Shown: positions 3,510 to 57,793 of the stretch, in pieces
Numbering within the stretch: position 1 is the stretch's first letter
Layout: the number at the start of each line of letters is the position of its first letter
From: Octopus bimaculoides
Lineage: Eukaryota
Direction of reading: 5' to 3'
Length of the DNA stretch: 64,000 bases
Assembly (NCBI RefSeq): GCF_001194135.2
Contig: NC_068982.1
Location: forward strand, 105,542,843 to 105,606,842
Notes under the pieces: model-generated
The model's input: only the letters and a program-made list of their open reading frames with translations
What the model was told of the DNA's origin: nothing
Databases searched by the model: none
Position numbers and translations under genes: made by a program

Positions 3510-3985
3510 CACAGGCATGGCTTTGTGGTTAAGAAGCTCACTTTGCAACTATGTAGTTTCAGGTTCAATCCCTACTGCATGGCACCTTGGACAAGTGTCT
3601 TTTACTATAGTCCTTAACTGGCAAATGCCTTGTGAGTAAATTTGGTAGATGGAAACTGTGGAAGCCCATCATCTATATGTGTGTGTGTGTGTGTGCATGT
3701 GTGTATGGACACAAAGATACACACACACACACATATATATGTATACACACACACAATTATATGTGTATGTGTGTATCTTTGTGTTCGTCTCTCCTACCCA
3801 CAGCTTGACAGCCAGTGTTAGTTTGTTTACATCCTATAATGTAGCAGTTCAGCAAAAGAGACTGACAGAATAAGTACCAGACTTAAAAATGAGTACTGCG
3901 GTTGATTTGTTTGACTAAACCCATCAAAGTGGCACCCCAGCATGGTCACAGTCCAATGACTGAAACAAGTAAAAGATAAAAGATA
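3510..3985 (+). mobile_element. Second tRNA-derived SINE family with internal (TG/CA)n
   Basis: Head GGCATGGCTTTGTGGTTAAG...GGTTCAATCCC...CCTTGGACAAGTGTC. Partial relatives occur near 10335, 13280, 22620, 23710, 29780 and 61290. Confidence 0.7.
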
Positions 3986-10030: not shown

Positions 10031-12104
10031 AGAGCCAACTGAAACAAACTTGTACAGTTCTTCATTCTGACACTTTTCTGCAACACTAGACTCTACTCTT
10101 CTGATCAGTTAGACTGTATTGGATTTCAATTTGATGCATTTATTCCATGAGTGCTTTTCAACTGTATCATTTAAAAAAAAATTTGCTTTATTAAACGACA
10201 CATGTAATACTTCATTCTAACAACTTCACTTGAATTCTCACATTAGTTAATGCTTTCAGAGAATGTAAGTTTCAAGAAACTGGTTTCTTAAATTTTAAGC
10301 AGAAGAGTAACAGTTCTTTTGGGTAGGACAATGGGCAGAGGCATGTCAGTGGATTAAGAAGTTTGCTTTGCAGCAACATGCTTTAGGTTCAATCCAACTG
10401 TGTGGCCTTTTGGGTAGATGACTTCAACCAAGGTTTGTGAATGAAATTTGGTATATAGAAATTGTGTGAATGTCAACAGGAAGGATTCTTCTTGTTCTTG
10501 GGGAAACTTGCTCTGCCACCCTAATTAACATCTCTATTTCACCCTTAGGTACCTTTAGCAGAATCCACTTTAGACTGGAAATCTGACTTGAATGCAAACA
10601 TTCAAGTCAGATTTCCAGTCTAAAGATAACTTCCTCCTTTTTTTTTCTTTCTCATTAGTCTCTGAGGTTCTGGAAAAAATTATAAGCACTGCCCTTCCTC
10701 TTCTAATTCAGACATTAAAAAAAAAGAACTTTCATGGAAAGACTAATTTGTTTCAGACAGCCATGTAAACTGAAGAAAGTAAAATTAATGAAACTCATAA
10801 TACTTGGGCTGATCTCCCAAACCTATCAACTCAGGCAGTTCTCTGGTATCCACTCGCATAAACCCCTATCAAATACTAATCTCTGAAATTTAAGCCAACA
10901 AATGAGCCTGAACAATTTGCAAGAAATAGTATAAAAATTTATCTCAACACACTGTATTTTTTTTTTTTAAGGATGGACATATTGCATAATGTACTTGATA
11001 TGCGATACTTAAGAGGATAATAAAAACTGAAACATCTTTTATCATAGGTTTACTTGGTTAGAGATGACCTGGAGCTAAACAACAACTAACGATTTTAATT
11101 GCATTGTCACAGAATTCTTACATACCTGTAAACATCAACTACACTATCTTAAAATTCTTAACACTTCAACTATATTAACTGCACTGTCTTCTAATTTTTA
11201 ACACCACTCCAAACAGTATAAAAAACATCTAAGAAATTTCAATTCTCTTTAAATATCAAATGATACCCAGCATAGTCCACATTCTGTTATCAAAAGAAAA
11301 CCATTTTAAAAATGATTTTTTTATCATTATTATTGTGAAGAACCCAAGTGATCGGTTTGTCTTGAATATGAAAATGTATACAGAATATTAAATTTATAGT
11401 GGTTATCATGTCATCACTAGGTTTAGATTATGTTAAATTCATTGCACGTTTTCTTTTTCTCTTAAACAATAAATGTTTGAAAAAAAATCACGTTTTACTT
11501 GTTAGAATCTTTCACAAAAATATCCAACCACATAACAAAAGTAATTTAGCAACAGTAGGGATAATATATAAGCACAACACGAAAACGATGATCGTGATTG
11601 ACGTGTTACAGCGCGTCATATAAACTGAAGCCAACAGAGTTATCTACCTTATCTAGCCGTATTTAATGACAATAGCAAGGGCCTTAAATTCTTGACTACA
11701 TGCTCAGTAGTTAAACCTACCATTTCCCATTTGACTTTTGCGAAAACCTTAAAATACACTCCATGTCTTTGGGGGTCCCTAAATACAAAATAATTATATG
11801 TCTTTTTCCATCTTTCACAAAGTCAAGTTCCTTAAGATATTTAATCAAATCACATATTGAAATGTTTGCCACAAAGAAGGTTTGAGAAATCTGTTTAGTC
11901 TGATAACAGCAAGCACATTAGAGAAAAATAAGCTTCCAAAGGAGGAAGTTCAAAACTGTTTTGATTCCTAGTAGTGGTTATTTCACGTCCATAACATTAT
12001 TGTCTTTACAAAAGTCATGAACACTACAGATTGCCATTCCATTCAATAACAGCTCTACAGAGATCATTAAGATACATTATTTCTAGTTTGATATATTCTG
12101 TCAC

Positions 12105-12320: not shown

Positions 12321-13962
12321 TTCTGTCACTAAGCTGTTCAGTATTTTCATGTCTTGATCAGGATGCATTATTGTTACTTGTAGTTATTTAGCCTTATATC
12401 AATTGTGATTGAGCAGATGACCAATGGTGCTCCAGCCAAAACCATCCCATCTGCTCATCTCAGACTACAGTATCAAGTGTGTTTCCCTCCCCATCTTTTT
12501 TAAAGCTTTTGAGATACAAGTTGAGATTTGGCTGCTATTTTTAGCAAGTCAAGTGGTCATGTAAAGCAGCGGTTCTTAATTTGGTCCTTGATTCCTATTG
12601 TACTCTGCTGGCCCCTAAAAAGTATTTGATATTTTAAAAAGTCCCATCATATTTTTGATTAGATATTAGGAATTCTATAAAAAAAAAGATTTTTTTAATA
12701 TTTTGTGTATAGCAGAAGTATTACTAATTTGTTGCACATAAATTTTAATAGTTCATGTGGACTCCAGTTGTGAACTGAAATCTTGATTCTTCAGCTGAAA
12801 AGCCAGCATTAAACTATTCACCTTCATAAATTAGCAAGGTAGGGGAGGGAATTCTAATTTTGACACTAGCAATCATAGTAACATATATGCAATATATGAA
12901 GATAGGAAACTGTCAGTCATATTATGTGGAAGAACAATGCCTTTTAGGAAGTGGATTAGTGATTTATTATGTGGTTTCAGTTATTAGACTGCAGTCATGC
13001 TGGAGCATTACCTATGAGGCTTTAGTGGATCATATCAACCATAATGCCAATTTCAGTTTGTTAGTTATTTTATCAACTCTGTTAAGTTACAAGAAATAGA
13101 AGGACAATATAAACTACACCAGTATAACTATATACACGTTTTTTTCAGAGAGCATCTAGTGACTGTCCTGTTTCTTCAAGCATATAAATTTTGTGCATAA
13201 ATATTTATTTAATATATTAAGTGTAGGCATGCAGATTTTTCGGCACGTAAAAAAAATTAGGATACAAAAATAAGTGAATGTGTGATTAAGAAGCTTGCTT
13301 TCCAGCCCTGTGGTCTTGAATTCACTCTTACTTCATGGCACCTTAGGCATGTGTCTTGAGTGGATTTGGTAGACAGAAACTGAAAGAACTCTACTGAATA
13401 TTGAAAAGAAGTCTATATAATCATCATTGTTTAATCTCTACCTTCCATCCAGGCATGAGTTGGACAGTTTGACAGGAGCCAGCCATGTAGAAACTACCCC
13501 AGGCTACTGTGTGTTTTGGCAGAGTTCTTAGGGCTGGATACCCTTCCTAATACCAGGCACTCTGCAGAGAAGACCGAGTGCTTTTTACATGGCACCAGGC
13601 AAGGACAGTTTTGGCATGATTTTTATAGCTGGGTGCCTTTCCAAATGCAAGCCACTTTAGTGTGAATTGGATGCTTTTTATGTGGTACCAGCACAATCAC
13701 CACGTAACTTGCAAAACAAGTTATACACATGTATATATGTGTGCACACTTATCCTGACATTACATGATGGCTGTAAACAAGCATCACTGTCATACAAGTG
13801 ATGTTGATTCCAGACTTCCGTGGAAAAATTTCTGGTCATGGTAAATATTACTTGCCTAGAAACAGGTGAGGGTTGGCAACAGAAAGGGCAATCTGGCTGT
13901 AGAAAATCTGCCTGCATGGAAAAGTGGATGCAAAAATGATGATAAAATTGAGGACTGATATA

Positions 13963-21002: not shown

Positions 21003-22831
21003 TGGTAATAAAAGTGTTAAGTGACATCACTTGCTATTTTAGTATCTGGAACTTTCCAGTTAGGCAAAGCCTGAAGTTCTGCGAACTTGTAAAAGAAGTA
21101 GATTTATCAACAATGCTATGTGTTATTAAAGAGCATTTTGTTCCTTGGTTTCAGTGGGCTTGTTACTCTCTTACACCTCAGAGTTTGTGTTTACAGTGTC
21201 TAATACCAATTACATTAGCATCTTAGGAGTGAATCCATAGAATAAAATTGCACAAAATACTTTCAGTCACATTAACCATTGAAAGATATATGGCTAGATC
21301 TACCTAAATTCTTGCAGTTTTTTCAACTCAATAAATGATATGTTTAGAACATTATTATTTTCAGAAGTTCTCCACTTCTATTGTTCAAACAAATGATATT
21401 GAAATCTTTCCTTCTTTTTGTTTATTTGTTAGTCTTCCTTCTTAGACAGAGATAATCTGACTGACTGTTTGTGCTGCTAATGAATTTCAGGCTAATAATT
21501 TGGCAGTGAAGGAGTTCTAAGGAGATGTCAAAATATGAAAACTCTCTTCATTTTTTCCACCACAAAATAATTTTATTCTGATTCCAAAGCCAGCATTAAT
21601 TAGCTTCCCTATTTGCTATTTCTATGGTCTTTGTAAACGGAATTTTAGTCTAATTTTTTATACCACTACATAAAAATCTACATATATAATTAAACTGTCC
21701 AACTGTTAGTACATTAATGTACTGTATAAATGAAATTTGTGTCTGTTTGTGTGCATGCACACATGAATATCAATACACAAAAATTACCATTCAACACTCA
21801 TTATGGTCAGCTATTCCTAACTTGAAATACTGCTTTCCAGATTACACACCACAACCAAAACCATTAGCCACATATACTTCATCTCAATAGGCAACTTTTA
21901 ACTTCTGAAAACCTACTACCAGCCAACTCAAGAGACTCTGTTCAAAGCTTATGCATATATATTTAACATTTGTAAAAGCCATAGATAGTATTCCATGAGA
22001 CTTACATCAAGCACTTTCAAAAACCACTATTACCAACATCTACACTCTTTTAGATTAAAGGACAAAGGAAACACCACATCCTTGTATCAAAATATGTGGG
22101 CAGTCAGGAGCCAAGGAACAGATTGCTCTCCAACACAGAGCATTGTCAATAAAGTTACTTCCCGTCAAATGGATCACAAAACTGCAGGTCTTGTCTAACC
22201 GAAAAGTTCCAGATATTAAAACAGCAAATGATATCACTTAACCAGATATATAATCTAATTACAGCCATTTGAAAAATTTTTTTTGGAAAGATTCTACATG
22301 CTTAAAAATCCAAAACTTTCCAAAGCTCCACAGATATTAGGTTTAACAAGCATTGCAGAGTAGTTGTCCCTTGAAAATTAGAGGTCTGTACTAGGCTGTT
22401 TCCTTAACCACACAAGTCTAGCTAGCAATATCAGTTAGACATTTGTTCACCAAGACCCACCTATGATCAATGAGAATCAGATTAGCTGATACATTGTGAA
22501 CTCAGCTTCAATCATTTACCATTGATTAACTGCAGATGAATCTTAAGTGTATGAAGCTCCAAGTAATAACTGAATGAATCATCAAATTAATCCATACATA
22601 CATATATATTCCCAATAGTTGAATAGCAAGCATCTTGACCACACAATCATGTGTGTGTGTGTGTGTGTGCATTGCCTTGAAGAATCTTTAGTTGAATGCA
22701 TCAACCCCACTACTTACTTTTTATAAGCTTGGTACTTATTTTCTATCAGCCTTTTGCTGAACTACTAAGTTACAGGAATGTAAACACACCAGCACCAGCA
22801 TTGGTGGGGGAAACAAACACAGACAAACAGA

Positions 22832-22871
<40 letters not shown>

Positions 22872-22881
<10 letters not shown>

Positions 22882-23692
22882 AGGGCATTACTATACAATA
22901 ACGCCTCACGCCATGAGGGACTCTAAGGTCAGACTACTATAAAAAGCACATTTTTACTGGATGTGAGGAAATGCAACTCTCAAAGCCAACCCCTTAAAAA
23001 CGGACTAAATTATAGATCATGATTTCGTAGTTATTGTAGTATTATACAACTTCTACTCGTCAGTATAATATGGTCAAGAAAAATAGAAATAAACAGTGAA
23101 TCAACATACCAAACGAACACCGTGTATCCAGCATAGCATATAGACGACTGTTCATCGCTATTTCCCTATGTAAGTGGCGGGAATTTTGAATTGCATCTCG
23201 GTAAATATGCCTCTTACTCAGAATAAATTCAGCACTGAATATATTCTGGTAATATATTTAAATTCAATAATAGGACGAATTCTTTTACAAGAATTTATCA
23301 AGTAGCTAGCNNNNNNNNNNNNNNNNNNNNNNNNNNNNNNNNNNNNNNNNNNNNNNNNNNNNNNNNNNNNNNNNNNNNNNNNNNNNNNNTTTATATTTAT
23401 ATAAGGGCATTACTATACAATAACACCTCACGCCATGAGGGACTCTAAGGTCAGACTACTATAAAAAGCACATTTTTACTGGATGTGAGGAAATGCAACT
23501 CTCAAAGCCAACCCCTTAGTAGTCTGACCTTAGAGTCCCTCATGGCGTGAGGCGTTATTGTATAGTAATGCCCTTATATAAATATAAATATATATTTCGG
23601 GAATAAATGATGGATTTTTTCCCTTATGAGGTTTTTTCACGCTAGCTACTTGATAAATTCTTGTAAAAGAATTCGTCCTATTATTGAATTTA
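22872..23692 (-). mobile_element. Retrozyme-like element A: ~494-bp head-to-tail unit (1.25 copies) plus inverted segment, next to (TA)n
   Basis: The unit start ataagggcattact occurs at 22879 and 23401. The segment 23517-23692 is an inverted copy spanning the unit junction. The unit contains a hammerhead at 23009-23069 and no credible ORF. Confidence 0.8.
23009..23069 (-). ncRNA. Type I hammerhead ribozyme in element A
   Basis: Minus strand reads ATTATA CTGACGA GTAG-aag-TTGTA-taatac-TACAA-taa-CTAC GAAA TCATGA TC^TATAAT. All core nucleotides are present, stem I is a perfect 6 bp, and stem III is the palindrome ATCATGAT. AUC cleavage falls between 23015 and 23014. Confidence 0.9.
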
Positions 23693-24151
23693 TATATATA
23701 TATATAGGACAAGCTTCTTTCAGCTTCTGCCTACCAGATCCACTCACAAGGCTTTGGTTGACCCAAGACACTTGCCCTAGATGCCACACAGTAGGACTGA
23801 ACCCAGAACCATGTGCAAGCTACTCACCACACACACAAATATTACTAAATAATGATTGTTACTGAGCAGAGCTATCATAACTGCATGTAAGAGTTAATGC
23901 TAATAACTAAGACTTTAATCCTGAAGTTCAAATTTCCAACAGTAATATTTCTTTTATAACTATTATAATATAAACAGGATTACAAAAATGAGTTAGTACA
24001 TTAAGAGCTGTAAAAGGTAGTAATCTATACATATAAATTTGACATGGGCAATTCTTTCTTGTCTTGGGATTCAGTCAAATGGCTGGGTGGAATTGCATGA
24101 AAAATTACACAGATGTGTAGAATGATCCAGTGGTGATGCTGGGCTTTGAAT

Positions 24152-26633: not shown

Positions 26634-27143
26634 TACCCAATATTGGTTGTTGTCTTACCACCAGAGACTTCATCTTCAATGTATCAAGTGCAAATCAACC
26701 TAACAGTTATCTCTCTATACAATATTGAAAATGTAGGTACAAAAAGAAGGCGAAGTGAAATGGCTTAATCAGGAGTTGAACCTGTATTCTGGATTTGGCT
26801 CACCAAAAGTTTGCCACTAATTCATGGCAAACTTTTCATATTTTAATTCATGGCAAACTTTTCATATTTTAATTCATGGCAAACTTTTCATATTTTAATG
26901 ATTGTACCAATCAGATCGGTACAATCATTAAAATATGTTTATGTAAACACCATGAATTAGTGGCAAACTTTTGGTGAGCCAAATCCAGAATACAGGTTCA
27001 ACTCCTGATTAAGCCATTTCACTTCGCCTTCTTTTTGTACCTACATTTTCAATATTGTATAGAGAGATGACTGTGAGGTTGACTTGCACTTGATACATTG
27101 AAGATGAAGTCTCTGGTGGTAAGACAACAACCAATATTGGGTA
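26634..27143. repeat. 510-bp foldback element with 194-bp inverted arms, internal 26-bp x3 tandem and inner hairpin
   Basis: Arms 26634-26827 and 26950-27143 differ at three positions by eye. Ends are TA-CCCAATATTGG...CCAATATTGGG-TA. Inner hairpin at 26889-26937. Confidence 0.95.
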
Positions 27144-33384: not shown

Positions 33385-33590
33385 GACGGATTCATCATCA
33401 CAGCAGGCTGCACATGTACAAGAAGTAGCATGTGCTCGGAGAATGCCATCTTCAATTAAGCACTGTAGAGTTCGGCCACCATATCGGATACTGCGTTTCC
33501 AGTCTTTACTGCTGGCACGACCACAAAAGGTTTCAAACTCATTTGGAGTGAACCACTGTTCAGAACTTTTTATACATTTTCCACGACCAC
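33385..33590 (-). CDS. DEAF1: DEAF1 coding exon 2 (SAND domain core)
   Basis: attttcag acceptor and gtatgt donor, 206 nt. Encodes [66 protein letters not shown], which has the KDWK motif and the DEAF1-specific [12 protein letters not shown] zinc-binding motif. Confidence 0.98.
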
Positions 33591-33894
33591 CTGAAAATTA
33601 GAGATTATACATTTGATACATTGCAACATTATTTTAAACAAGGGAGAAGAAATTTGCAAGGCCTAAAGTTCTATGAAATTATATAGGTTAATATATCAGG
33701 ACATAACATGAAGGAGGAATGATAACCTATAAAAGGACCTGATAGAAAGTTTCCTTTCTATAGTTACATTAAAATAATTTTGACTGCAGAATCTCAGGAG
33801 AGTCTATGAAGATTTAAATTCACAATAATCTAATTCTTAATCATGTCTGATAACAATTCTTTATCATCAACTTAGGTTTTAATTTAAATAACCT

Positions 33895-35345: not shown

Positions 35346-35967
35346 GCAAAGCTCTCTATAAGCATATATATATATATATATANNNNNNNNNNNNNNNNNN
35401 NNNNNNNNNNNNNNNNNNNNNNNNNNNNNNNNNNNNNNNNNNNNNNNNNNNNNNNNNNNNNNNNNNNNNNNNNNNNNNNNNNNNNNNNNNNNNNNNNNNN
35501 NNNNNNNNNNNNNNNNNNNNNNNNNNNNNNNNNNNNNNNNNNNNNNNNNNNNNNNNNNNNNNNNNNNNNNNNNNNNNNNNNNNNNNNNNNNNNNNNNNNN
35601 NNNNNNNNNNNNNNNNNNNNNNNNNNNNNNNNNNNNNNNNNNNNNNNNNNNNNNNNNNNNNNNNNNNNNNNNNNNNNNNNNNNNNNNNNNNNNNNNNNNN
35701 NNNNNNNNNNNNNNNNNNNNNNNNNNNNNNNNNNNNNNNNNNNNNNNNNNNNNNNNNNNNNNNNNNNNNNNNNNNNNNNNNNNNNNNNNNNNNNNNNNNN
35801 NNNNNNNNNNNNNNNNNNNNNNNNNNNNNNNNNNNNNNNNNNNNNNNNNNNNNNNNNNNNNNNNNNNNNNNNNNNNNNNNNNNNNNNNNNTATATATATA
35901 TATATATATATATGCTTATTGAGAGCTGTGCAAGCCATGTACAGGGACATAAAATATGGCACCGTAT

Positions 35968-36410
35968 AACAAAAGCATATATATATGCTTTCAGTGCGAA
36001 TGGCTTTGTTATACGGTGCCATATTTTACAATGCTGTAAATAATAATAATGGTATTTTTATATAAGCTTATGCTGTTCACCGTGCAATGACTAAGGAAAA
36101 TAGTCAAATGATGGGACATATAAGCCCTCGAGAGAAAAAAGAAGGCTTATCCATCCACGTGGGACATGAGCCCACATCCCCTTGTTAACATGACTAAGTG
36201 TGTTACCTTTACACACGGATGGGAAAGCCTTCTTTTGTCTGTTGAGGGCTTATATGCCTTGTTATTAGACTATTTTCCTTAGTCATTGCACGGTGTACAC
36301 CATAAACTTTAAGCTTATATAAAAATACCATTATTATTATTTACAGGAATGTAAAATACAGCACCATACAACAAAGCCATTTGCACCAAAAGCATATATA
36401 TATATATATA
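35968..36410. mobile_element. Imperfect ~440-bp foldback/MITE-like element bounded by (TA)n
   Basis: Left arm (gctttcagtgcgaatggctttgtt...aatggtatttttatataagctt...gactaaggaaaatagtc) is the reverse complement of the right arm, with scattered mismatches and indels. Confidence 0.8.
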
Positions 36411-36662
36411 GCAATAAGAAAATGGAAGGGAATATGTGGTACTCATCATCTTGCAGACATTGTATTATATTAATTTACCTGTTTATTTTTCAACTAAGAG
36501 GACAATAAAAAACAATATACAAACACATATGACATATGTCACATGTGTTTGTATATTGTTTTTATTGTCCTCTTAGTTGAAAAATAATCAGGTAAATTGA
36601 CAGAATACAATCTGTGCAAGTTGATGAGTACCACATATTCCCCTCCATTTTCTTATTGCTAT
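36409..36662. mobile_element. ~250-bp hairpin MITE flanked by TA
   Basis: TAGCAATAAGAAAATGGA...TCCATTTTCTTATTGCTA. The arms are complementary almost to the centre near 36535. Confidence 0.85.
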
Positions 36663-36840
36663 ATAAATTAAGGGTAAAATTTCATCTTACCCGCACCCAT
36701 TTATTGCACTTGGTAAAAACACTAGTGTAATAGTAATTGGGTATCCTTCCGGCAGTATATTGGATAAATATTATCCCTTAGTGGGTTGGATTCACAACCC
36801 CTAACTTTCTTGGATTATATATATATATATATATATATAT

Positions 36841-37136
36841 ATGATCGTTGCCAGTGCCCCTGGACTGGCTCTTGTGCGGGTGGCACATAAAAGACACCAT
36901 TTCGAGCGTGGCCGTTGCCAGTACCGCCTGACTGGCCTTCGTGCGGGTGACACGTAAAAGCACCCACTACACTCTCTGAGTGGTTGGCGTTAGGAAAGGC
37001 ATCCAGCTGTAGAAACTCTGCCAAATTAGATTGGAGCCTGGTGTTGCCATCCAGTTTCACCAGTCCTCAGTCAAATCGTTCAACCCTTGCTAGCATGGAA
37101 AGCGGACGTTAAACGACGATGATGATGATGATGATA
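36841..37136 (+). mobile_element. RTE 3' UTR fragment, opposite orientation, (GAT)n tail
   Basis: Reverse complement of the 31986 and 30164 copies. Confidence 0.87.
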
Positions 37137-37353
37137 TATACACACACACATCTCTCTCTATATATATATCCATATACTATTCATATAAATACAGTGTACA
37201 TTTAAATACACTGTATTTATATGAATAATATATAGTCTATTGACTAATTTTTCTACACACGAGACCACTGGTAGTAAAAAATTTCTAAAATTTTTCCTTA
37301 CCCTGATATTATTAATTATATATCCATATATATAGGTGGATATATATATATAT

Positions 37354-38226
37354 ACCAGGTGACCTGCCCAGTAATTCCTGGGAAGGTGGGCTTATCCCTT
37401 GGTTCCATTCTCAAAATTGTTTCGCTAATCCAGTAACAATACAAAGTATGTAGCCCTTAAAACGGTTTTTGTGTATCTATTGAGAATACTGAACTGTCTT
37501 ACAAATGATCTTGTTTTAGGAATTCCCAATAAGTTATGAATACCCAAATTGTGGAGTCAGTTATGTAATAACATGAAATTAATTACCCTATAGTAACAAT
37601 TCAAATAAAGTAGCCCCAAAAAGGGCTTTAATATGTTCCTAGAGTATATAGATCTTAGGAGGAAATACTAAAATCGTGAAACATTACGTAATAACAGGCT
37701 AATCAGATATGAGATAATAACAATTCAAAGTAAATAACTGTGGAAAAAGCTTTTGTGTGTTCCCAGAGAATATTACCCTCAGCAGCGCTAGTGTTGGTAT
37801 ATTTGTGAATAAGTCACTAACTGAAATAAGTGGATCTATTGTTTAGGAGAATACTATTTACTTGTTCAAGCCTTGTACTGGATAAATTGAGAAAATAACT
37901 AAAATAGTTCAAATACTATGAAATAAGCATACTCAATTTCATTTTTACAAATAATTTACAAAGGAGGGAATGGGTTATTTCCCTTGGACGCTTAAAAATA
38001 ATTATGCCAGCCATTCAATCACGCCCAAATGTTATTCCTCCTACCGTTTACCCAAACATTTTTTCGAAATCAATTAATACTTAAAACCTCCCTAAACACA
38101 TAAGCAATGTGGATGTGAAGTTTAAGAAAAATCGGTTGAGCTGTTTTGGTGCAAAATGAGGACATATAGATACATACACACACACACACACACAGACAGA
38201 CATTTTCAGTTTTAATATGTAAGATT
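37354..38226 (+). mobile_element. Non-autonomous Helitron-like (DINE-1/Lep1/HINE-type) element
   Basis: 5' ACCAGGTGACCTGCCCAG..CTGGG hairpin and degenerate internal repeats (agtaacaat.caaa...). The 3' end AAAATCGGTTGAGCTGTTTT, (CA)n-CAGACAGAC, ttttaatatgtaagat is typical of this class. Confidence 0.65.
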
Positions 38227-39548: not shown

Positions 39549-40324
39549 AATATAGTAGGGTTTGATTTAAAGGAGATTTTGCTGCTATTTATAGGCTTCC
39601 ACATAGACTGACTAAACATATGGAAATGATTCATATGGTACCTCATTCAGCCACAATCCTTAGTCTAGTATATTAACTAGACACTCTTTAATTGTTTAAA
39701 ATAACTAATGCTGCATATAGTGGCTATAAACACAACAAAATATATGTAATAAAATAGAAACAAATATATGCTCTATTATATTGACTAATTAATAAATATG
39801 AATGGGAGTTGACAATAACAATGGAAGGATACTGGTAAGAATTTCAGAAGGACGATCAATATTCATGAAAGACTTGGTATTATTTGTAGAAAGTGCCAGA
39901 TTTTTCCTTATTTTGGTTGTGCTCATTAAGTATTTAGTTAGTTTGTTGTTCTGGTATTGTTTTCCATGAGCTGTATGAATGATATTCCAACAATGAATAT
40001 TATACGAAGATGTGTTGAATAGTCCAAATCAGTGCTGATTGTACAGATACAAGATGTACTGGTTGGCAGTTGGTTTAACAATTAAGTGAAATCTAGATGT
40101 GGCTTGCCTCTGCCTGGTTCAAAAACAAACTGTACACTTCTCAAGCAAAAAGTGATTAATCATATTAGGTGCAGTATGGGCACTCAAATCTGTCAGAATT
40201 AGCAGTCAAATCTCCTTCAAACTACTCCCTACTAAGTTTAAAATCATTGAAAATGAAGGATATATAATATATTCTGTTTTTTACTGTTGTTAGAGAAGAG
40301 CTAAGTAATGCAGCTATTAAAGTT

Positions 40325-40396
40325 TTGGATGTAGCTCAGTGGTAGAGCGTTCGCTTTGCATGCGAACGGCCCCGGGTTCGATCCCTAGCATCTCCA
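40325..40396 (+). tRNA. trnA-TGC: tRNA-Ala(TGC), variant or recent pseudogene
   Basis: D arm GCTC/GAGC, anticodon arm TTCGC-TTTGCAT-GCGAA, GTTCGATC T loop, G3:U70 Ala identity pair, and a T5 terminator at 40404-40408. Positions 1-2 are TT and do not pair with CC. The T stem has a C-A mismatch. Confidence 0.85.
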
Positions 40397-40408
40397 GAAT
40401 ATCTTTTT

Positions 40409-40558: not shown

Positions 40559-43124
40559 AACAAGTATTTCCATATATTTATATATGGCTGGTGTTGTTTT
40601 GTGTATGATATATAGCTGTGGCTAAGTTGGAAGCTGTGGGTTATTGCGATATAGCAATGCACGAATGTCTCATCATTTAGAAATTGCAGTTGTACAATTC
40701 AGACCTTTTCCAGGAAGCAGAAGTGTAACTGAGAATGACAGAGCTTAGATATCCAATCACACATTTCTAGTGAAACTAGACGAAACATGTAAATGTATGG
40801 GAATAAAGCATAGGTGAACATGGAATAAGCTCTGCATTTTGTTGGGCATATGAGAAACTCATCATCATCATTTAACATCCATGTTCGATGCTGGCATGGG
40901 CTGGATGGTTTTGACAAGATCTAATGGCCTAAGGACTGCACTGTGCTCTCATGTCTGTTTTGGCACAGTTTTTATGGTTGGATGCTCTTCCTAATACCAA
41001 CCACTATACAATGCGTACCAGGTGCTTTTTTTCATGCAATCAGCACTAATGAGGTTGCCATGCAGTTTGCAAGACTATGAACCCTGATGGGGTAGCTTTA
41101 TATTAGAAAATGGGGGGGGGGGGGGTGAAAATAAGGGAGAAGGGGCCAGAGCAGAACAGGTTTCTAGCTGTATTTCACATACTCTAGTGAACCATTCAGA
41201 AGAGGTTGTTGATTTTAAATATTTAGTGATTTCGTATATAAAACGCCTCCGTTACTTAGTAGACAGTTTTCGACAAGTGAGTATGTAAAGCGTATTATTT
41301 CTGCATAGCGTCTGAGGTAACATGTAAATTTTATTATGCAAGTCTAAAAGTGTTTAGAGGAATTTTGTAGCGAGATGTAGTGAGGAGACAATGAAGTAGA
41401 TACTATAATACGACAAACTGATGGTTTAAAACTGATCAACAGCAATAACTTGGCCAACCTCAGAGGTCCTTAGGTTATGGTGCAGTCCATTCCTCCGAAG
41501 AGCTATCTATCTATCTTCCATAATCTACCAAAGACATCATTGCAGTCATGGTCGCGCCGTATTTACTTTTCAAGGGTAGTATATCTAGATGGTTGGGTGT
41601 GATTTGAGGGAGATTTTGGCAGCTGTTTCTAGTAGGTCGAGAGATAGAATGTCATCTCCACAAGTAGAAAAATTAACGAGAAAAACACGCCTGATGAGGA
41701 AGACATGCAAAGATATGACATCATTGAAGAACATCAGAATTGACGGCGTGATATATGAAAAATGCGACACAAACACATCGTTGTACTGCTACTGAAGAAG
41801 CTTCAGTTGCTCGACCAGCAAGAAATAGATCCAAATATACCCCTAAGTCACATCTCAATATTTTAAAGAAAAAGGGAAAGGCATATAGAAAAACGTAGTC
41901 CTAGATATACAAGGTAGGATGGTCATAGTTGGAGAGTTTTTGATCACAAATTTACTGAATCAAGGTCGACTTGGAACGAAACAACAATAACCAAATGACT
42001 CATAAGAAGTTTCAGGTAATTTATAATAGCTAATTCATTATTTAGAAACTGCCAGTCTGAGAGAACAGCGCCATTTTTATGTTTACGTAATGATACACAA
42101 ATATATTTATTTTGATGTACGTCCTTTAATGTTTAAATACGTTTGCTACAATTGTCAGATCGGAGTATATTTAATGCAATGAACAGAAAAGGGTTGTTTA
42201 GAAATCTTTTCTTTCAGCTATGAAAGTATGGATGGAAATATAGTTTTAAAAATGCTCCAGCAGCTACGTGTTTGGTAAAGTTTACAAACAATCAAGTATC
42301 GTTTACCACGAGTCTCCTTTCGCAAATCACAATGCTAAATAGTTGTGATCTTACAAAGCTGTGCAACGAGATTACGAAAGTATACAGAAACTGACATCTC
42401 CCATTCCATCAACAATCAACTAGATACTAAATGTAAAAACCACAAAGAATTTTTAGCATTAAACAATCTACTACAAGCAATTCGGTTAATATATTTATCT
42501 TCATCTTTTACTATTTGTAACCGAAATAACTGAGATAAATTATTTGTTTTCGAAAGAAAAACAACTTGTAGCAGTTATATTTCTCACTCAGATGTTCTAC
42601 CACAGAACAACAATGACTTAATAAACCTCAGATAGTATTTTTCTTTTTTTTTACTTTTCAATATTCGAATAAATTATCTCGTTTCTTTTCATTCTTATAG
42701 CATATAACAAACAATATTGCTGAATAGTGTGATAATTCATTTGAGTGGATTTATAAAACAATTAAAAGTACAGTCTGTTACCAAGAAGGGTGAGCGATTT
42801 TAGTGTTTTTATAACTTTCATTCATTCCTGTACAATTTAGGAGGAAACTAGGAAATTTTTTGATTGGAATTAAATACGATCAATTATAATAAAGGAATTG
42901 ATCAACTGATCAATAATAATAAAGGAAAAGAAACAATCAATATAATGGGAAGAGTTACTAAGCAAAACAAATGAAGATCATCTGATTAGCAATTATTGTT
43001 TAACAGAAAACAAAACAAAATGCGCTGAGTTTTGAATGGATATAAAACAATTATAAACATTTAAATGAAGGACAAAACTATAAACCGTAACAGGTTAAGA
43101 GAAAATGACTGGAGCAGTTCCTAC

Positions 43125-43560
43125 CTGATCCAAATTTGTTCTTGTAGAGTTCTCCATTAGTGTGTTTACATCTGACAGGCAAAATCATGCAATGAACTGA
43201 TTCGTCCCATTGATACTTGAACCCTTTAATATCTTTATCAAGAGGAGTTGGTTGGGTACTTAATGGAGGTTTCAATTCAGTCTCGTCAGCAACACTTAAG
43301 GTTTGATCATGAATCACGATATGTGTGGTCTTGATACCTGCTTCCTGAAGCTGCTCTGCAGAGAGTATACCTTGAGATGTTGCAACAAACACTTGATCTG
43401 CTGGAATGGTACCGTTGTTAGTGACCACGGATGGGGTGACAGTACCAGCACCACTGTCCGTACCTGGATGGTCGGAGGCAGTCTGCTGTGGGTCCTCCTC
43501 CTCCGTGAAGGCGGGATCGTCACCATTCGGTAACGAGTCGGAAATATCGACTTCAGACAT
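43125..43560 (-). CDS. DEAF1: DEAF1 coding exon 1 (acidic N-terminus and start of SAND)
   Basis: ATG at 43560. Ends LPVRCKHTNGELYKNKFGSG with donor G|gtagga in phase 1, matching exon 2. The seven exons total 1380 nt, i.e. 459 aa plus stop. Confidence 0.95.
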
Positions 43561-48176: not shown

Positions 48177-49620
48177 AATGCCACGATGAAAGGTTGCTCA
48201 AAGAGAATGAATGGGAGAAAGAGAGTCTGCCAAATGTCGACCCAACAGAGGGACCAGCTATCCAAGTTGACAGTGCCATGGTAGATAAAGCAATTAAGAG
48301 TATGAAGACAGGGAAAGCCCCCGGCCCATCGGGGATCACTGCAGAGATGCTCAAAATATCTGGCAGTGTCGGCTATAGCCTAGTCACTCATATAGTTAAC
48401 CAGGTGATACATGGAGTCATACACAATGACTGGTGTAGCAGCAAAGGTAACTGGTGACGCTTTAGATACAAATAATTACAGAGGTCTCCAGTTGTTGGGT
48501 CAGGTAATGAAGGTCACGGAGAGGGTCATAGCCCAACTAATTAGGGAGAGAGTCAGTTTAGATGAGATGCAGTTTGGGTTCGTGCCAGGGAAAAGCACCA
48601 CTGATGCTATATTTCTGGTAAGACAGCTGCAGGAGAAATACCTAGCCAAAGATAAACCTCTGTACCTGGCTTTCGTTGACATGGAGAAAGCCTTTGACAG
48701 GGTCCCCCGCTCCCTTATCTGGTGGTCAATGAGGAAACTAGGGATAAATGAATGGTTAGTGAGAGCTGTGCAAGCCATGTACAGGGGCGCTATCAGTAAG
48801 GTGAGGGTTGGCAACGAGTACTATGAAGAATTCCGGGTAGGAGTCCACCACGGTTCAGTCCTCAGCTCCCTCCTATTTATCATAGTTCTCCAGGCAATAA
48901 CAGAGGAATTCAANNNNNNNNNNNNNNNNNNNNNNNNNNNNNNNNNGATGCTCCTGGGAGCTCCTCTATGCTGATGACCTTGCGCTAATTGCTGAGTCAC
49001 TATCAGAACTAGAGAAGTTTCAGGTGTGGAAGCAAGGACTAGAATCGAAGGGCCTTAGAGTCAACCTAGCTAAAACCAAAGTCCTAATAAGTAGGGAGGT
49101 AGACAAAACACAAACCCTTTCAGGTAGATGACTTTTACCACATTCCAGGGAGAAAAACTAGAAGTAGTTGATAGCTTCCGTTACCTAGGTGACCAAGTCT
49201 GTAGCAGAGGAGGGTGCGCTGAAAGTGTAGCTGCTAGAATAAGAATGGCCCGGACAAAGTTCAGAGAGCTCTTACCTCTGCTGGTGACAAAGGGCCTCTC
49301 ACTCAGAGTAAAAGGCAGACTGTATGACGCATGTGTACGAACAGCCATGCTACATGGTAGTGAAACATGGGCCATGACTGCTGAGGACATGCGTAAGCTT
49401 GCAAAAAATGAAGCCAGTATGCTCTGCTGGATGTGTAATGTCAGTGTGTATACACAACAGAGTGTAAGCACCTTGAGAGAAAAGTTGGACCTAAGAAACA
49501 TCAATTGTGGTGTGCAAAAGAGACGATTGCGCTGGTATGGTCATGTGGCAAGAATGGATCAGGATAGCTGTGTGAAAAAGTGCCACACCCTAGTGGTTGA
49601 GGGAACCTGTGGAAGAGGTT
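48177..49620 (+). mobile_element. RTE-clade LINE reverse transcriptase fragment with internal deletion
   Basis: GKAPGPSGI, QFGFVPGKSTTDAI, YLAFVDMEKAFDRV, GVHHGSVLS, LYADDL and LHGSETW motifs. Frameshifts are present and the C-rich segment is deleted near 49130. Confidence 0.95.
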
Positions 49621-50039
49621 GTGGACTGGTATTGTAGATAAAGCCTTAAAATCTAAAAAACAAGCCTGAAAAGATTAAAGGCAGAGCAAAGAGCAGTATC
49701 AGTTGGAAAATAGATGGGTGCAATGTGTAGCCAAGAGGGAAGCTGTAAGAGGTTTGTCAATATTTGTGATAAGAGGTTTAGAGGATAAAGTGTTCCACTG
49801 CAAAGTAGTGTGTTGGTGTGAAATGAGATGTAGTGAGGGGAAAATGTGCATGCAATCATAGCAGTGCACTGACATAAGTGGCATAGAAATGTTATTGTAA
49901 GGAAGTTGCTGAATGAAGAGAAAGTGAGAGACTGGGTCTTTTCTAAGTATACCCAGTTGCTATTGAAATTAACTGCTTTATGGTTGAAATTACCATTAAA
50001 GATGTATGAGATACTGAAAATATTCTGCTGGTATTTGTG

Positions 50040-52329: not shown

Positions 52330-53875
52330 TATAATCATCATCATCATCATTTAACGTCCGTTTTCCATGCTAGCATGGGTTGGACGATTTGACTGAGAAC
52401 TGGTGAACCACATGGCTACACCAGGCTCCAATCTGATTTGGCAGAGTTTCTACAGCTGGATGCCCTTCCTAACGCCAACCACTCCGAGAGTGTAGTGGGT
52501 GCTTTTACGTGCCGCTGGCACGAAGGCCAGTCAGGAGGTACTGGCAAAGGCCATGCTCAAAATGGTGTTTTTTATGTGCTACCTGCACAGGAGCCAGTCC
52601 AGTGGCACTGGCAACGACCTCGCTCGAATATCTTTTCACGTGCCAGGAAGGCGACGCTGGTAACGGTCACACTCAAATGGTGCTATTTACGTGCCACTGG
52701 CACAGAAGCCAGACAGCTGCTCTGGCAATGATCACACTCGGACAGTGCTCTTAGCGCTCCACTGGTACNNNNNNNNNNGACAGCTGCTCTGGCAATGATC
52801 ACACTCGGACAGTGCTCTTAGCGCTCCACTGGTACAGGTGCCATCACGATTTCGCTTTCACTTGCCCCAACAGGTCTTCCCAAGCCGAGTTTAGTGTTCA
52901 ATGAAGGAGACGTTGGCACGGGTGCCAGTCGTTGAATTTAGTTCAATTTCGATTTCACTTGCCTCAACTGGTCTTTGCAAGCCGAGTTTAGTGTCCAATG
53001 AAGGAAAGGTACGCATAAGTGGGCTGGTAGAGGCCGCGGATTATGGTCTCACTTGGCTTGCCGGGTCTTCTCACGCACAGTATATTTCCAAAGATCTCGG
53101 TCACAAGTCACGCCTCGGTGAGGCCTAATGTTCGTAGGTCGTGCTTAACCACCTCATCCCAGGTCTTTCTGGGTCTACCTCTTCCACAGGTTCCCTCAAC
53201 TGCTAGGGTGTGGCACTTTTTCACACAGCCATCCTCATCCATTCTTGCCACACGACCATACCAGCGCAATCGTCTCTCTTGTACACCACAACTCATGCTT
53301 CTTAGGTTCAACTTCTCTCTCAAGGTACTTACACTCTGTTGAATATGCACACTGACATTACTCATCCATCGGAGAATACTGGCTTCATTCCTTGCGAGCT
53401 TACGCATGTCCTCAGCAGTCACGGCCCATGTTTCACTACCATGTAGCATGGTTGTTCGTACACATGCGTCATACAGTCTGCCTTTTACTCTGAGTGAGAG
53501 GGCTTTTGTCACCAGCAGAGGTAAGAGTTCTCTGAACTTTGCCTGAGCCATTCTTATTTTAGTAGCTACACTTTCAGCACACTTTCCTCCACTACTATCT
53601 TGGTCACCTAGACAGCGGAAACCATCAACTACGTCTAGTTTTTCTCCTTGGAATGTGGCAGAAGTTGTTTTCTGCACATTTACAGTGTTTATTCCTCCTG
53701 AACATCTGCCACATACAAAAACTAACTTCCTAGTTAACCTTCCTTTGATATTGCTGCACCTCTTATGTGTCCATAGCTTACACTGGGAACATCTTATAGA
53801 GTTTCTACCTATGCCTTTTCTCCAGATCGAGCAGGGCCATCTACCTGAAAGGGTTTGTGTTTTGTCTAAAAATAG
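52330..53875 (-). mobile_element. RTE LINE 3' portion with complete 3' UTR and (GAT)n tail
   Basis: ORF 53108-53677 ends GRGRPRKTWDEVVKHDLRTLGL. It is followed by a tandemly repetitive 3' UTR that explains all the short dispersed copies. Confidence 0.95.
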
Positions 53876-54906: not shown

Positions 54907-55018
54907 GCTCTTGGAGCAGGGAAACTTGGAGAATATGACAATGAACTAATTGAAGCCCCAGAAGATGAAGAAGACAATGATCTCCGAAATGATGAAACTT
55001 TTGGACTTTCTGATGATG
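54907..55018 (+). CDS. PATL1: PAT1 homologue coding exon 2
   Basis: Poly-T...gctgcag acceptor and gtaatt donor. EEDNDLRNDETFG resembles the PAT1 N-terminal DDX6-binding (D..NDDTFG) motif. Confidence 0.8.
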
Positions 55019-56029: not shown

Positions 56030-56208
56030 CCTAAGCACCCACTACACTCTCAGAGTGGTTGGCGTTAGGAAGGGCATCCAGCTGTAGAAACTCTGCCAAA
56101 TCAGATTGGAGCCTGGTGTAGCCATCTGGTTTCACCAGTACTCAGTCAAATCGTTCAACCCATGCTAGCATGGAAAGCGGACGTTAAACGATGATGATGA
56201 TGATGATA
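56030..56208 (+). mobile_element. RTE 3' terminal fragment
   Basis: Shared tail plus (GAT)n. An oppositely oriented variant lies at ~55615-55960. Confidence 0.85.
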
Positions 56209-57207: not shown

Positions 57208-57793
57208 TATATATATTTATATAAGGGCATTACTACAGAATAATGCCACACACTAGACTTCCATAATAAACAAATTTTTACCAAATGCGAGGAAAAGCAA
57301 CTCTTAAAAAAAACGAACCTTTTAAAAACAAACTCCACTATATATCGAACAATTTCACGATTATTAGAATATTATCTAACTTTCGATCATCAGTATAGTA
57401 TGGTACAAATATATAAAAATAAACAAAATCCTCAACTTACCAAAACAAACACCTTATGTATCCGACATAGCAAACAGAATAATGTTTATCCTTATACATC
57501 TATGTAAAAAGCAGGAATTTTTTTAATTGCTCTCGGTACACATGTTTAAAACGGAATAAAATTCAGCACTGAATATATTCTGGATATATATTTAATTAAT
57601 TCAATAAGATAAAATCTTTTACAAGAATTTTATCAAGAAGCTAGCGTGAAAAAACTCCTAAGGGAAAAATAAACTATCATTTTTTATTCCCAAGAATATA
57701 TTTATTTATTTATATTTATATAAGGGCATTACTACAGAATAATGCCAAACACTAGACTTTTTTTCATGCTAGCTTCTTGATAAAATTCTTGTA
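57208..57793 (-). mobile_element. Retrozyme-like element B: 499-bp head-to-tail unit plus short inversion
   Basis: ataagggcattact occurs at 57221 and 57720. 57759-57793 is an inverted copy of ~57619-57654. Collinear with element A, sharing blocks such as aattcagcactgaatatattctgg and ttttacaagaattt.atcaag.agctagc. Confidence 0.8.
57337..57399 (-). ncRNA. Type I hammerhead ribozyme in element B
   Basis: Minus strand reads ACTATA CTGATGA TCGA-aag-TTAGA-taatat-TCTAA-taa-TCGT GAAA TTGTTCGA TA^TATAGT. Intact core, 6-bp stem I and AUA cleavage site. There is a T-T mismatch at the first stem II pair. Confidence 0.85.

What the first reader, a model, noticed from the sequence alone, without database searches (positions are those of the whole stretch)
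22872..23692. Retrozyme-like ~494-bp tandem unit carrying an intact hammerhead ribozyme (element A)
Seen: a non-coding unit repeated head-to-tail, with the junction confirmed independently of the N-gap by the inverted segment 23517-23692. It contains a textbook type I hammerhead on the minus strand (23069-23009). On that strand the second copy starts ~20 nt downstream of the predicted cleavage site and then flips orientation, and the 3' end abuts (TA)n. Established: non-LTR retrozymes and hammerhead satellites (newt satellite 2, schistosome Sm-alpha, Dolichopoda pDo500) are tandem non-coding units whose multimeric transcripts self-cleave to monomers that can circularise. 5' truncation with inversion is a hallmark of target-primed reverse transcription. 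Inference: a cephalopod retrozyme family mobilised in trans, possibly by Penelope-like elements. I cannot tell from here whether it has been described.
Basis: partly seen in the sequence, partly recalled or inferred. Interest (0 to 1): 0.92.

Follow-up and report, generated by a model that had tools for sequence, protein, structure and literature searches.

The report
Hammerhead-ribozyme retroelement inserted Penelope-style
A 495-base non-coding mobile element carrying a hammerhead self-cleaving RNA motif has jumped into a (TA)n microsatellite, leaving the partial-tandem-plus-inverted-copy scar typical of Penelope-like retrotransposons; it is a new family of an already known kind.

Summary
There is a 495-nt non-coding unit, followed by a 123-nt start of a second copy and then an inverted piece that crosses the unit junction and supplies the 52 nt hidden by the N-gap. 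On the minus strand, 23069-23009 fits a type I hammerhead. No shuffle in 300 gave a match as good. Rfam Hammerhead_1 aligns end to end, but at 24.8 bits it is below the 34-bit threshold.

A second copy, 73% identical, lies at 57216-57793. It has the same layout with different breakpoints. Its hammerhead keeps the catalytic core, and 6 of 16 helix pairs carry compensatory changes.

Each locus shows only one ribozyme and about 1.1-1.25 units, so neither is a demonstrated retrozyme array. The layout on the ribozyme strand is: inverted 5'-truncated copy, partial copy, full copy, a fixed 3' end, TA-rich microsatellite. This is the published signature of Penelope-like element (PLE) integration.

The best reading is a non-autonomous, PLE-mobilised hammerhead element of the non-LTR retrozyme class. 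This is a new member of a known kind. Three things are untested: self-cleavage, circular RNA, and the cephalopod attribution. No relatives could be retrieved from any collection I could search.

The parts
22834..22874 (.). (TA)20 microsatellite abutting the element's fixed 3' terminus (as read on the minus, ribozyme strand). Presumed target or priming site.
   Evidence: Only 1.15% of window positions lie within 15 nt of a (TA)>=5 run.
22874..23395 (-). Full unit of element A1. True length is 495 nt. It includes the assembly gap 23311-23389, whose real content is 52 nt (or 52 + n x 495).
   Evidence: GC is 33% and the longest ORF is 43 aa.
23009..23069 (-). Type I hammerhead ribozyme motif of A1. 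Helix I is 6 bp. The core is CUGACGA...GAAA. Helix II is 4 bp + AA/AA internal loop + 6 bp + hexaloop. Helix III is 2 bp + palindromic CAUG (AUCAUGAU). Predicted cleavage is after C17, between 23015 and 23014.
   Evidence: the cofold MFE of two copies is the double hammerhead with an 8-bp intermolecular helix III. (covariation). (Rfam RF00163, 24.8 bits, sub-threshold).
23396..23518 (-). Upstream partial copy on the ribozyme strand, pseudo-LTR-like. It is the 3'-terminal 123 nt of the unit and has no hammerhead.
   Evidence: D2; 1 mismatch in 123, at a CpG.
23517..23692 (+). Inverted 5'-truncated copy. It spans the unit junction (unit positions 381-495 + 1-68). Its inner end joins the partial copy through a 2-nt TA overlap.
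   Evidence: (I1-I3), (0 mismatches to the full copy).
23691..23706 (.). (TA)8 on the other side of the insertion.
22690..22833 (.). Left half of the older dispersed SINE-like repeat whose internal microsatellite received A1. The right half is at 23707-23830.
   Evidence: A paralogue at 3520-3960 (-) has an uninterrupted microsatellite and no A element.
57216..57714 (-). Full unit of the diverged second copy A2 (499 nt, about 73% identical to A1).
57336..57400 (-). Hammerhead of A2: ACUAUA-CUGAUGA-[UCGA AA GUUAGA UAAUAU UCUAAU AA UCGU]-GAAA-UUGUUCGA-UA|UAUAGU. The 10.1-11.1 position is U.U. Helix III is 3 bp + GUUC. Predicted cleavage is between 57343 and 57342.
   Evidence: There is no Rfam hit.
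57715..57759 (-). A2 upstream partial copy (about 45 nt of the unit 3' end).
   Evidence: (D4).
57759..57793 (+). A2 inverted 5'-truncated copy (unit positions about 407-441), followed by a (TACA)n/(CA)n microsatellite.
   Evidence: (I15).

Best explanation
Element A is a roughly 495-nt non-coding, non-autonomous retroelement. It belongs to the hammerhead-bearing class called non-LTR retrozymes, or PLE-derived repeats. Its integration here was carried out by a Penelope-like-element reverse transcriptase/GIY-YIG endonuclease supplied in trans.

Shown:
- The functional strand is the window's minus strand. It carries a type I hammerhead whose helices covary between two copies that are 27% diverged. 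In both copies the whole RNA folds far better than shuffles and far better than its antisense.
- Both copies end at exactly the same 3' nucleotide (...GUAGUAAUGCCCUUAUAUAAAUAUA) against a (TA)n run.
- Both continue upstream past one full unit into a second, 5'-truncated copy, and are then capped by an inverted 5'-truncated copy.
- The breakpoints differ between loci, and the internal duplicates are near-identical. The structure was therefore made at each integration.
- A1 sits inside the internal microsatellite of an older repeat that has an empty paralogue.

Inferred mechanism:
1. Master copies with two or more units are transcribed.
2. Two hammerheads pair through the palindromic helix III (AUCAUGAU) and cleave after GAUC.
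3. Monomers may be ligated into circles.
4. A PLE endonuclease nicks (TA)n, and the TA 3'-OH anneals to the TA-rich tract at the unit junction.
5. Reverse transcription runs more than one turn or unit on a circular or multimeric template, producing the partial tandem.
6. The second nick primes internally at another TA-rich patch, producing the inverted copy.

The two loci seen here each carry one ribozyme. They are probably inert daughters, not circle-producing masters.
For: - Motif statistics. Only two descriptor hits occur in 128 kb of strand, and they are the two homologous sites. No shuffle in 300 was as good.
- Rfam: Hammerhead_1 aligns full-length, but below threshold.
- Covariation: 6 of 16 hammerhead helix pairs are compensatory and 1 is broken. 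Slid controls give 0-1. RNAalifold on whole monomers gives 118 pairs, 15 of them compensatory.
- Strand-specific structure: A1 sense MFE is -135.7 (z = -5.0) against antisense -103.2. A2 sense is -116.6 (z = -5.9) against antisense -74.3.
- Dimer: the cofold MFE of two A1 motifs is the double hammerhead.
- Architecture and breakpoints.
- The 3' terminus is identical in both copies.
- Microsatellite association: 3 of 4 ends abut a (TA)>=5 run, against a 1.15% background.
- Nested insertion with an empty paralogue.
- Literature:
  - PLE insertions consist of a partial tandem plus an inverted 5'-truncated copy. They prefer (TA)n and other microsatellites, carry hammerheads in their pLTRs, and break assemblies (PMC8557442).
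  - Metazoan type I hammerheads have helix I of 6 bp, helix II of 4 bp, and a short palindromic helix III that works as a dimer (PMC4209133).
  - Axolotl HHR_Amex2 has the same U.U at the base of helix II together with a firmer helix III, as A2 does, and it still cleaves (PMC7229834).
  - Retrozymes have been proposed as PLE derivatives (preprint).
Against: - No autonomous PLE, and no RT/GIY-YIG ORF, is present in the window. The only reverse-transcriptase fragments are RTE-like LINEs.
- No sequence link between the unit and any PLE terminus could be tested.
- There are only two copies, so covariation rests on a single sequence pair.
- The hammerhead scores below Rfam's gathering threshold, and A2 gets no Rfam hit.
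- Helix I is all A-U, and helix III is too weak to work as a monomer.
- There are no expression or cleavage data.
- (TA)n could be an element tail, as on some LINE/SINE 3' ends, and not a target.
- The gap at 23311-23389 might hide further units.
Confidence: 0.65

Rival explanations
1. This is a genuine tandem retrozyme array collapsed by the assembler. The gap hides one or more further 495-nt units, each with a hammerhead, so this locus itself yields monomeric or circular RNA.
For: The gap sits exactly inside the repeat, and its stated length (79) disagrees with the 52 nt required. PLE-type structures are known to break short-read assemblies. The A1 duplicates are 99-100% identical, which is the situation in which assemblers collapse repeats.
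Against: The ungapped second locus has exactly one full unit plus 45 nt. The sequence right of the gap continues for only 123 nt before inverting, as expected for a terminal partial copy.
Confidence: 0.2
2. These are heavily 5'-truncated remnants (pLTR region) of an autonomous Penelope-like element, not an independent non-autonomous family.
For: Hammerheads lie in PLE pLTRs, and most PLE insertions are 5'-truncated.
Against: The same head-to-tail junction (3' terminus joined to the same first base) is present in A1 direct, A1 inverted and the 27%-diverged A2. The junction is therefore inherited in the template. Random truncation would not hit the same base repeatedly. A full circle of only 495 nt has no room for an ORF.
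Confidence: 0.12
3. This is a SINE-like element mobilised by a LINE (for example the RTE-like elements in this window) through ordinary TPRT with twin priming. In that case (TA)n is a 3' microsatellite tail and the hammerhead is incidental.
For: RTE-like RT fragments lie at 48411-49637 and 53108-53677. Twin priming gives 5' inversions. The 3' end is fixed and followed by a simple repeat of variable length.
Against: There is no similarity between the unit and the LINE copies or their 3' regions. There is no Pol III B box within 2 mismatches, and the sense strand has several T5-8 runs. Read-through of more than one unit into a partial tandem is not a LINE/SINE feature, according to PMC8557442. 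(TA) runs lie on both sides of A1.
Confidence: 0.1
4. This is an ordinary dispersed repeat, and its hammerhead-like sequence is non-functional, either decayed or fortuitous.
For: The Rfam score is sub-threshold. Helix I is AU-only. A2 has a U.U at 10.1-11.1. There are no functional data.
Against: No shuffle in 300 was as good. All 11 core nucleotides are conserved in two copies that differ at 27% of sites. Of the helix pairs that vary, 6 of 7 are compensatory. The U.U variant is active in axolotl.
Confidence: 0.1
5. The direct/inverted duplication is an assembly or foldback-read artefact around the gap.
For: A gap lies inside the structure, and a palindromic layout can arise from chimeric reads.
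Against: A second, ungapped locus with diverged sequence has the same layout. The arms are separated by a 57-nt asymmetric loop. The partial copy differs from the full copy by a CpG transition.
Confidence: 0.03

Closest known systems
Metazoan non-LTR retrozymes (Cervera & de la Pena 2020, PMC7229834), including newt satellite 2 and axolotl Rtz_331/353
   Same: It is non-coding, low in GC (33%) and has a head-to-tail junction. It carries a type I hammerhead with a 6-bp helix I, a 4-bp proximal helix II and a short palindromic helix III implying dimeric action. The two subfamilies here mirror axolotl HHR_Amex1 (G-C base, weak helix III) and HHR_Amex2 (U.U base, firmer helix III).
   Different: The unit is 495-499 nt, above the reported 170-400 nt (150-450 bp). 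Helix II carries a covarying 6-bp extension beyond an AA/AA internal loop where loop 2 would be. The loci here are about 1.1-1.25 units with one ribozyme, not arrays. No RNA data exist.
Penelope-like elements and their pLTR hammerheads (PMC4209133; PMC8557442)
   Same: The insertion anatomy matches: a partial upstream copy, an inverted 5'-truncated copy at the 5' side, a microsatellite (TA)n target, a hammerhead, and assembly breakage.
   Different: There is no RT/GIY-YIG ORF and the whole unit is 495 nt. [quoted passage not shown] The (TA)n-preferring Naiad clade is reported to lack hammerheads.
Non-autonomous PLE derivatives such as Chlamydomonas MRC1/Chlamys non-autonomous families (PMC8557442) and Xenopus retrozyme families matching PLE pLTRs (bioRxiv 10.64898/2026.07.22.740005)
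   Same: These are short ORF-less elements that still produce pLTRs and head-to-tail insertions. They are presumed to borrow PLE machinery.
   Different: For those families, similarity to an autonomous partner's terminus was shown. Here no partner could be examined.
Schistosoma Sm-alpha and cave-cricket pDo500 hammerhead repeats
   Same: They are dispersed or tandem non-coding animal repeats carrying type I hammerheads.
   Different: Sm-alpha is a Pol III SINE-like element. Element A has no B box and has internal T-runs. There is no sequence similarity that I could test.

Membership tests
Hammerhead ribozyme, type I (Rfam RF00163) | Conserved catalytic core: C3U4G5A6N7G8A9, G12A13A14, the A15.1-U16.1 pair, and H17 (not G) before the cleavage site | tested here: met
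   A1 has CUGACGA...GAAA...U-C|. A2 has CUGAUGA...GAAA...U-A|.
Hammerhead ribozyme, type I (Rfam RF00163) | Three helices around the core, with helix I open and helices II and III capped. Pairing is maintained by covariation. | tested here: met
   Helix I is 6 bp, helix II is 4+6 bp, and helix III is 2-3 bp. Of 16 pairs, 6 are compensatory and 1 is broken, across only two sequences.
Hammerhead ribozyme, type I (Rfam RF00163) | Score at or above the curated Rfam gathering threshold (34 bits) | tested here: not met
   A1 scores 24.8 bits and is seen only in a 91-nt targeted search. It is absent at the gathering threshold and on 1.1 kb. A2 has no hit. The cause appears to be the 26-nt insertion in loop 2 and the weak helix III.
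Hammerhead ribozyme, type I (Rfam RF00163) | Site-specific self-cleavage giving 5'-OH and 2',3'-cyclic phosphate ends | not testable with these tools
   This needs in vitro transcription of monomer and dimer constructs.
Non-LTR retrozyme | Tandem head-to-tail repeats (dimer or longer) with a type I hammerhead in every unit | tested here: not met
   The head-to-tail junction is present, but only 1.25 units (A1) and 1.09 units (A2) are seen, each with one hammerhead. TRF calls no array. The A1 gap could hide more units. These loci correspond to the 'monomer/solo' category of the 2026 preprint.
Non-LTR retrozyme | Non-coding, low GC (<45-50%), unit of a few hundred bp (150-450) | tested here: inconclusive
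   The unit is non-coding with GC of 33% and 26%. Its length of 495-499 nt is slightly above the published range.
Non-LTR retrozyme | Expression as linear and circular monomer RNA | not testable with these tools
   No transcriptome is available. There is only indirect support: the sense RNA is strongly structured, with z = -5 to -6.
Penelope-like element insertion (autonomous or in trans) | Full copy preceded by a 5'-truncated partial tandem copy (pseudo-LTR) | tested here: met
   The partial copy is 123 nt in A1 and about 45 nt in A2. The definition is from PMC8557442.
Penelope-like element insertion (autonomous or in trans) | Inverted 5'-truncated copy adjacent at the 5' side | tested here: met
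   A1 has it at 23517-23692 and A2 at 57759-57793. The breakpoints differ, and the junctions show 1-2-nt microhomology.
Penelope-like element insertion (autonomous or in trans) | Insertion bias for microsatellites, (TA)n in particular | tested here: met
   Of the 4 ends, 3 abut a (TA)>=5 run and the fourth abuts (TACA)n/(CA)n. The background is 1.15%. With n = 2 loci this is suggestive only.
Penelope-like element insertion (autonomous or in trans) | RT + GIY-YIG ORF (autonomous), or sequence similarity of the unit to an autonomous PLE terminus (non-autonomous) | not testable with these tools
   There is no such ORF in the window. The source genome and Repbase are not available. Scans of other collections found nothing.
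Pol III SINE | Internal A and B boxes, with no internal oligo-T terminators | tested here: not met
   There is no B box within 2 mismatches. The sense strand has five to six T>=5 runs per unit. There is no tRNA or other Rfam match.
DNA transposon / MITE | Terminal inverted repeats at the two outer ends | tested here: not met
   The inverted repeats pair the left end with an internal segment, not with the right terminus. The outer ends (TTTATATAAGGGC... and ...CCTATTATTGAATTT) are unrelated.

The most novel reading that the evidence does not exclude
These two insertions would be the first insertion-site evidence, and in an invertebrate, that hammerhead retrozymes are integrated by a (TA)n-targeting Penelope-like RT/endonuclease. 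On this reading, priming occurs on the TA-rich tract of a circular or multimeric retrozyme RNA. Rolling read-through would give the partial tandem, and second-nick priming would give the inverted copy. That would turn the retrozyme-PLE link, so far argued from co-occurrence and pLTR similarity in vertebrates, into a mechanistically testable model. It would also imply a hammerhead element parasitising a PLE clade (Naiad or Neptune) that itself may lack hammerheads.
Probability: 0.3. Interest if true: 0.6.

Novelty: new member of a known kind. Interest (0 to 1): 0.4.

Why it matters
How animal hammerhead retrozymes get back into DNA is still open. The 2026 preprint that ties them to Penelope-like elements says explicitly that the mobilisation mechanism and invertebrate families remain to be studied.

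This family offers clean, young insertion scars. The internal duplicates are 99-100% identical, the 3' end is fixed, and there is an empty paralogous site. Together these point to PLE-type integration at (TA)n. The family also has a ribozyme variant with a covarying helix II extension that standard Rfam screening misses. Genome annotations based on Rfam thresholds, such as the 235 Hammerhead_1 hits reported for giant squid, probably undercount such elements.

Apart from that, this is one more family of a described class.

Tried and rejected
- Rfam at the gathering threshold on the whole window, and at E<=10 on 1.1 kb, gave no hammerhead. Only the 91-nt search showed it.
- Tandem Repeats Finder does not call the unit, because there are only 1.25 copies and an N gap.
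- The search for relatives gave nothing in every collection tried:
  - A 19-mer in metagenome contigs gave 12 loci, all chance matches of 19-24 nt.
  - A 20-mer in GTDB genomes gave 3 chance bacterial hits.
  - The viral contig scan gave none.
  - A chimeric query made of all spurious ORF translations of both copies, run against 5.8 billion proteins, gave none at E<=1.
- Organism identification failed:
  - The SAND-domain exon's best hit is 66% identical and unnamed.
  - The exact look-up failed.
  - The related ENA contig L013 has no copy of the element.
- Pol III promoter boxes are absent.
- There is no LINE 3'-end sharing.
- The outer ends have no TIRs.
- I rejected the idea that the composite (full + partial + inverted) is itself the ancestral transposing unit. 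The breakpoints differ between loci. The duplicates within a locus are 97-100% identical, whereas the two loci are 73% identical to each other.
- I rejected a link between the ribozyme cleavage site and the 5' end of the partial copy. The distance is 18 nt at A1 but about 100 nt at A2.
Full report
**1. What is in the sequence**

- A unit begins at 22874, just after a (TA)20 run, and runs to 23310.
- An N-gap occupies 23311-23389.
- The start of the unit recurs at 23396-23518, with 1 mismatch in 123, a CpG transition.
- From 23517 to 23692 the sequence is the reverse complement of the end of the unit, the junction, and the first 68 nt of the unit. It has 0 mismatches to the full copy over 66 + 52 nt.
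- A (TA)8 run follows.

**2. The gap**

The scan program asked that the gap be tested first. The inverted segment reads continuously from the left gap flank, through 52 nt, into the right gap flank. An independent diverged copy elsewhere in the window has the same order of blocks. The two sides are therefore in register. The unit is 495 nt, and the gap stands for 52 nt, not 79. It could also stand for 52 nt plus whole extra units, which cannot be excluded. The region is non-coding, with a longest ORF of 43 aa.

**3. The hammerhead**

On the minus strand, 23069-23009 reads AUUAUA CUGACGA GUAG-AA-GUUGUA-UAAUAC-UACAAU-AA-CUAC GAAA UCAUGA UC|UAUAAU. All core positions are present, including G10.1-C11.1 and A15.1-U16.1. 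The predicted cut falls between 23015 and 23014.
- A descriptor scan of both strands of the 64 kb finds this site alone. Dinucleotide shuffles give 0.077 loose hits per window, and none as good in 300 trials.
- Rfam does not report it at the gathering threshold or in a 1.1-kb search. On 91 nt, the best family is Hammerhead_1. It aligns over the full model at exactly these coordinates, at 24.8 bits against a threshold of 34. The cause appears to be a 26-nt insertion where loop 2 should be, together with a weak helix III.
- 'Textbook' is therefore too strong. 'Canonical core with an extended helix II' is accurate.
- Helix III is 2 bp capped by the palindrome CAUG. Cervera & de la Pena describe this form for metazoan type I hammerheads that act as dimers (PMC4209133).
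- When two copies are cofolded, the minimum-energy structure is the double hammerhead with an 8-bp intermolecular helix III.

**4. A second copy gives the decisive evidence**

BLAST of the unit against the window finds a full-length copy, 73% identical, at 57216-57714. A relaxed descriptor finds only two hammerheads in the whole window, and they are these two homologous sites.
- The second ribozyme keeps CUGAUGA, GAAA and a UA| cleavage site.
- Of the 16 pairs in helices I and II, 7 vary. Six of those are compensatory double changes. One, at 10.1-11.1, becomes U.U. Sliding the partners by 1-3 columns gives 0-1 compensatory pairs.
- The U.U-at-the-base variant, combined with a firmer helix III (3 bp + GUUC), matches what was reported for the self-cleaving axolotl HHR_Amex2 (PMC7229834).
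- The AA/AA internal loop is unchanged while both stems beside it covary. It lies after 4 bp of helix II, and the internal loop of helix I lies after 6 bp. That is the usual spacing for the loop-loop contact. A tertiary contact here is an inference.
- Whole-monomer RNAs of both copies fold much better than shuffles on the ribozyme strand (z = -5.0 and -5.9). They also fold much better than their antisense (-135.7 vs -103.2 and -116.6 vs -74.3 kcal/mol).
- RNAalifold finds 118 shared pairs, 15 of them compensatory.
- The RNA of the minus strand is therefore what has been conserved.

**5. Anatomy of the insertions**

Read on the ribozyme strand, both loci have the same order: inverted 5'-truncated copy, then 5'-truncated direct copy, then full unit, then a TA-rich microsatellite.
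- The direct partial copy is 123 nt at the first locus and about 45 nt at the second.
- The inverted piece covers unit positions 381-495 + 1-68 at the first locus and about 407-441 at the second.
- Duplicates within a locus are 97-100% identical, whereas the two loci are 73% identical to each other. The structure therefore arose separately at each integration and was not inherited as a composite.
- Both copies end at the same nucleotide...GTAGTAATGCCCTTATATAAATATA, directly against a TA run.
- The inversion junctions show 1-2 nt of overlap.
- The outer end of each inverted copy also coincides with a TA- or TACA-like patch next to a matching microsatellite.
- Only 1.15% of window positions lie within 15 nt of a (TA)>=5 run, yet three of the four ends do.
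- The first copy interrupts the internal microsatellite of an older dispersed SINE-like repeat. A paralogue at 3520-3960 has that microsatellite intact. This shows that the element arrived by insertion.

**6. What this matches**

Craig et al. describe PLE insertions as highly 5'-truncated and organised as partial tandems in which a truncated copy precedes the full one (the pseudo-LTR). They often have an inverted 5'-truncated copy adjacent at the 5' end. They show a strong bias for microsatellites ((TA)n for Naiads, with a zinc-finger linker proposed to mediate the bias in Neptune), and they are prone to breaking assemblies. Hammerheads lie in the pLTRs of canonical PLEs, and non-autonomous derivatives still make pLTRs and head-to-tail insertions (PMC8557442). 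The same paper states that these complex tandem/inverted structures are not seen in LINE TPRT. [quoted passage not shown] It leaves invertebrates and the mechanism open.

Element A fits this picture. It has no ORF. It has no Pol III boxes and several internal T-runs. It has no terminal inverted repeats. It has no similarity to the RTE-like LINE fragments in the window.

**7. Mechanism proposed**

Shown:
- a conserved, strand-specific structured RNA with a covarying hammerhead;
- a fixed 3' end at (TA)n;
- read-through beyond one unit;
- an inverted 5' copy;
- independent formation of this structure at two loci.

Inferred:
- The TA 3'-OH of a nicked (TA)n target anneals to the TA-rich tract at the unit junction.
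- A PLE reverse transcriptase copies more than one unit from a multimeric or circular template, so the 'unit boundary' is simply the priming site.
- The opposite nick primes internally to give the inverted copy.
- In master copies with two or more units, the hammerheads pair as dimers and release a 495-nt monomer that may be ligated.

Each locus here has only one ribozyme, because the partial copies stop short of it. As assembled, these loci are solo daughters and not circle-producing arrays. The family-defining 'tandem array with a ribozyme in each unit' is not met at these loci.

**8. What could not be done**

No relative of the element was found in metagenome, prokaryotic-genome or viral collections. 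None was found through translated spurious ORFs either.

The source organism was not identified. A SAND-domain (GMEB-like) host exon has only 66%-identical unnamed matches. 'Cephalopod' is therefore untested. For context, the giant squid genome paper reports 235 Rfam Hammerhead_1 hits and Penelope elements (PMC6962438), so hammerheads in cephalopods would not be new in themselves.

**9. Verdict**

This is a new family of a known class, with a somewhat unusual ribozyme and informative insertion scars.

Noticed in passing
window 43078-43560 (-) and about 33400-33600 (-); conserved block 54890-55025: These are exons of a SAND-domain (GMEB-like) gene on the minus strand. The second exon reads GGRGKCIK...WFTPNEFE...[19 protein letters not shown]. 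An 86%-conserved non-coding or UTR block matches the related contig L013. Element A1's ribozyme strand is the same as the gene strand. A1 may therefore lie in a downstream intron in sense orientation, where a monomer-inactive hammerhead would be tolerated.
   Followed up: partly
window 3520-3960 (-), 22690-22833 + 23707-23830, 10376-10453, 13357-13388, 61330-61372: A dispersed SINE-like repeat family with an internal (CA/TA/TG)n microsatellite. One copy is the host of the A1 insertion. From memory it resembles an abundant octopus SINE, but this was not tested.
   Followed up: partly
window 48411-49637 (+) and 53108-53677 (-): Two RTE-like LINE reverse-transcriptase fragments, 87-90% identical to each other. 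One is interrupted by the gap at 48914-48946.
   Followed up: partly
window 40324-40397 (+): A tRNA-Ala(UGC) gene. Rfam gives 47.6 bits, and ARAGORN agrees.
   Followed up: yes
window 35364-37354: A cluster of seven (TA)n runs around the 508-nt gap at 35383-35890. This could mark another microsatellite-targeted insertion that broke the assembly. BLAST found no copy of element A there.
   Followed up: no
window 26818-26899, 63663-63742, 61695-61778, 55898-56031: Short perfect or near-perfect minisatellites (periods 26, 22, 40 and 42; 2-3.6 copies) of unknown origin.
   Followed up: no
window 23222-23247 (A1) and 57561-57585 (A2), minus strand: A 25-nt block, CCAGAATATATTCAGTGCTGAATTT, is identical in the two otherwise 73%-identical copies. 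It forms a conserved hairpin (AUUCAG-UG-CUGAAU) and is the best-conserved part of the element outside its 3' terminus. Its function is unknown; it could be an RT or protein recognition site.
   Followed up: partly
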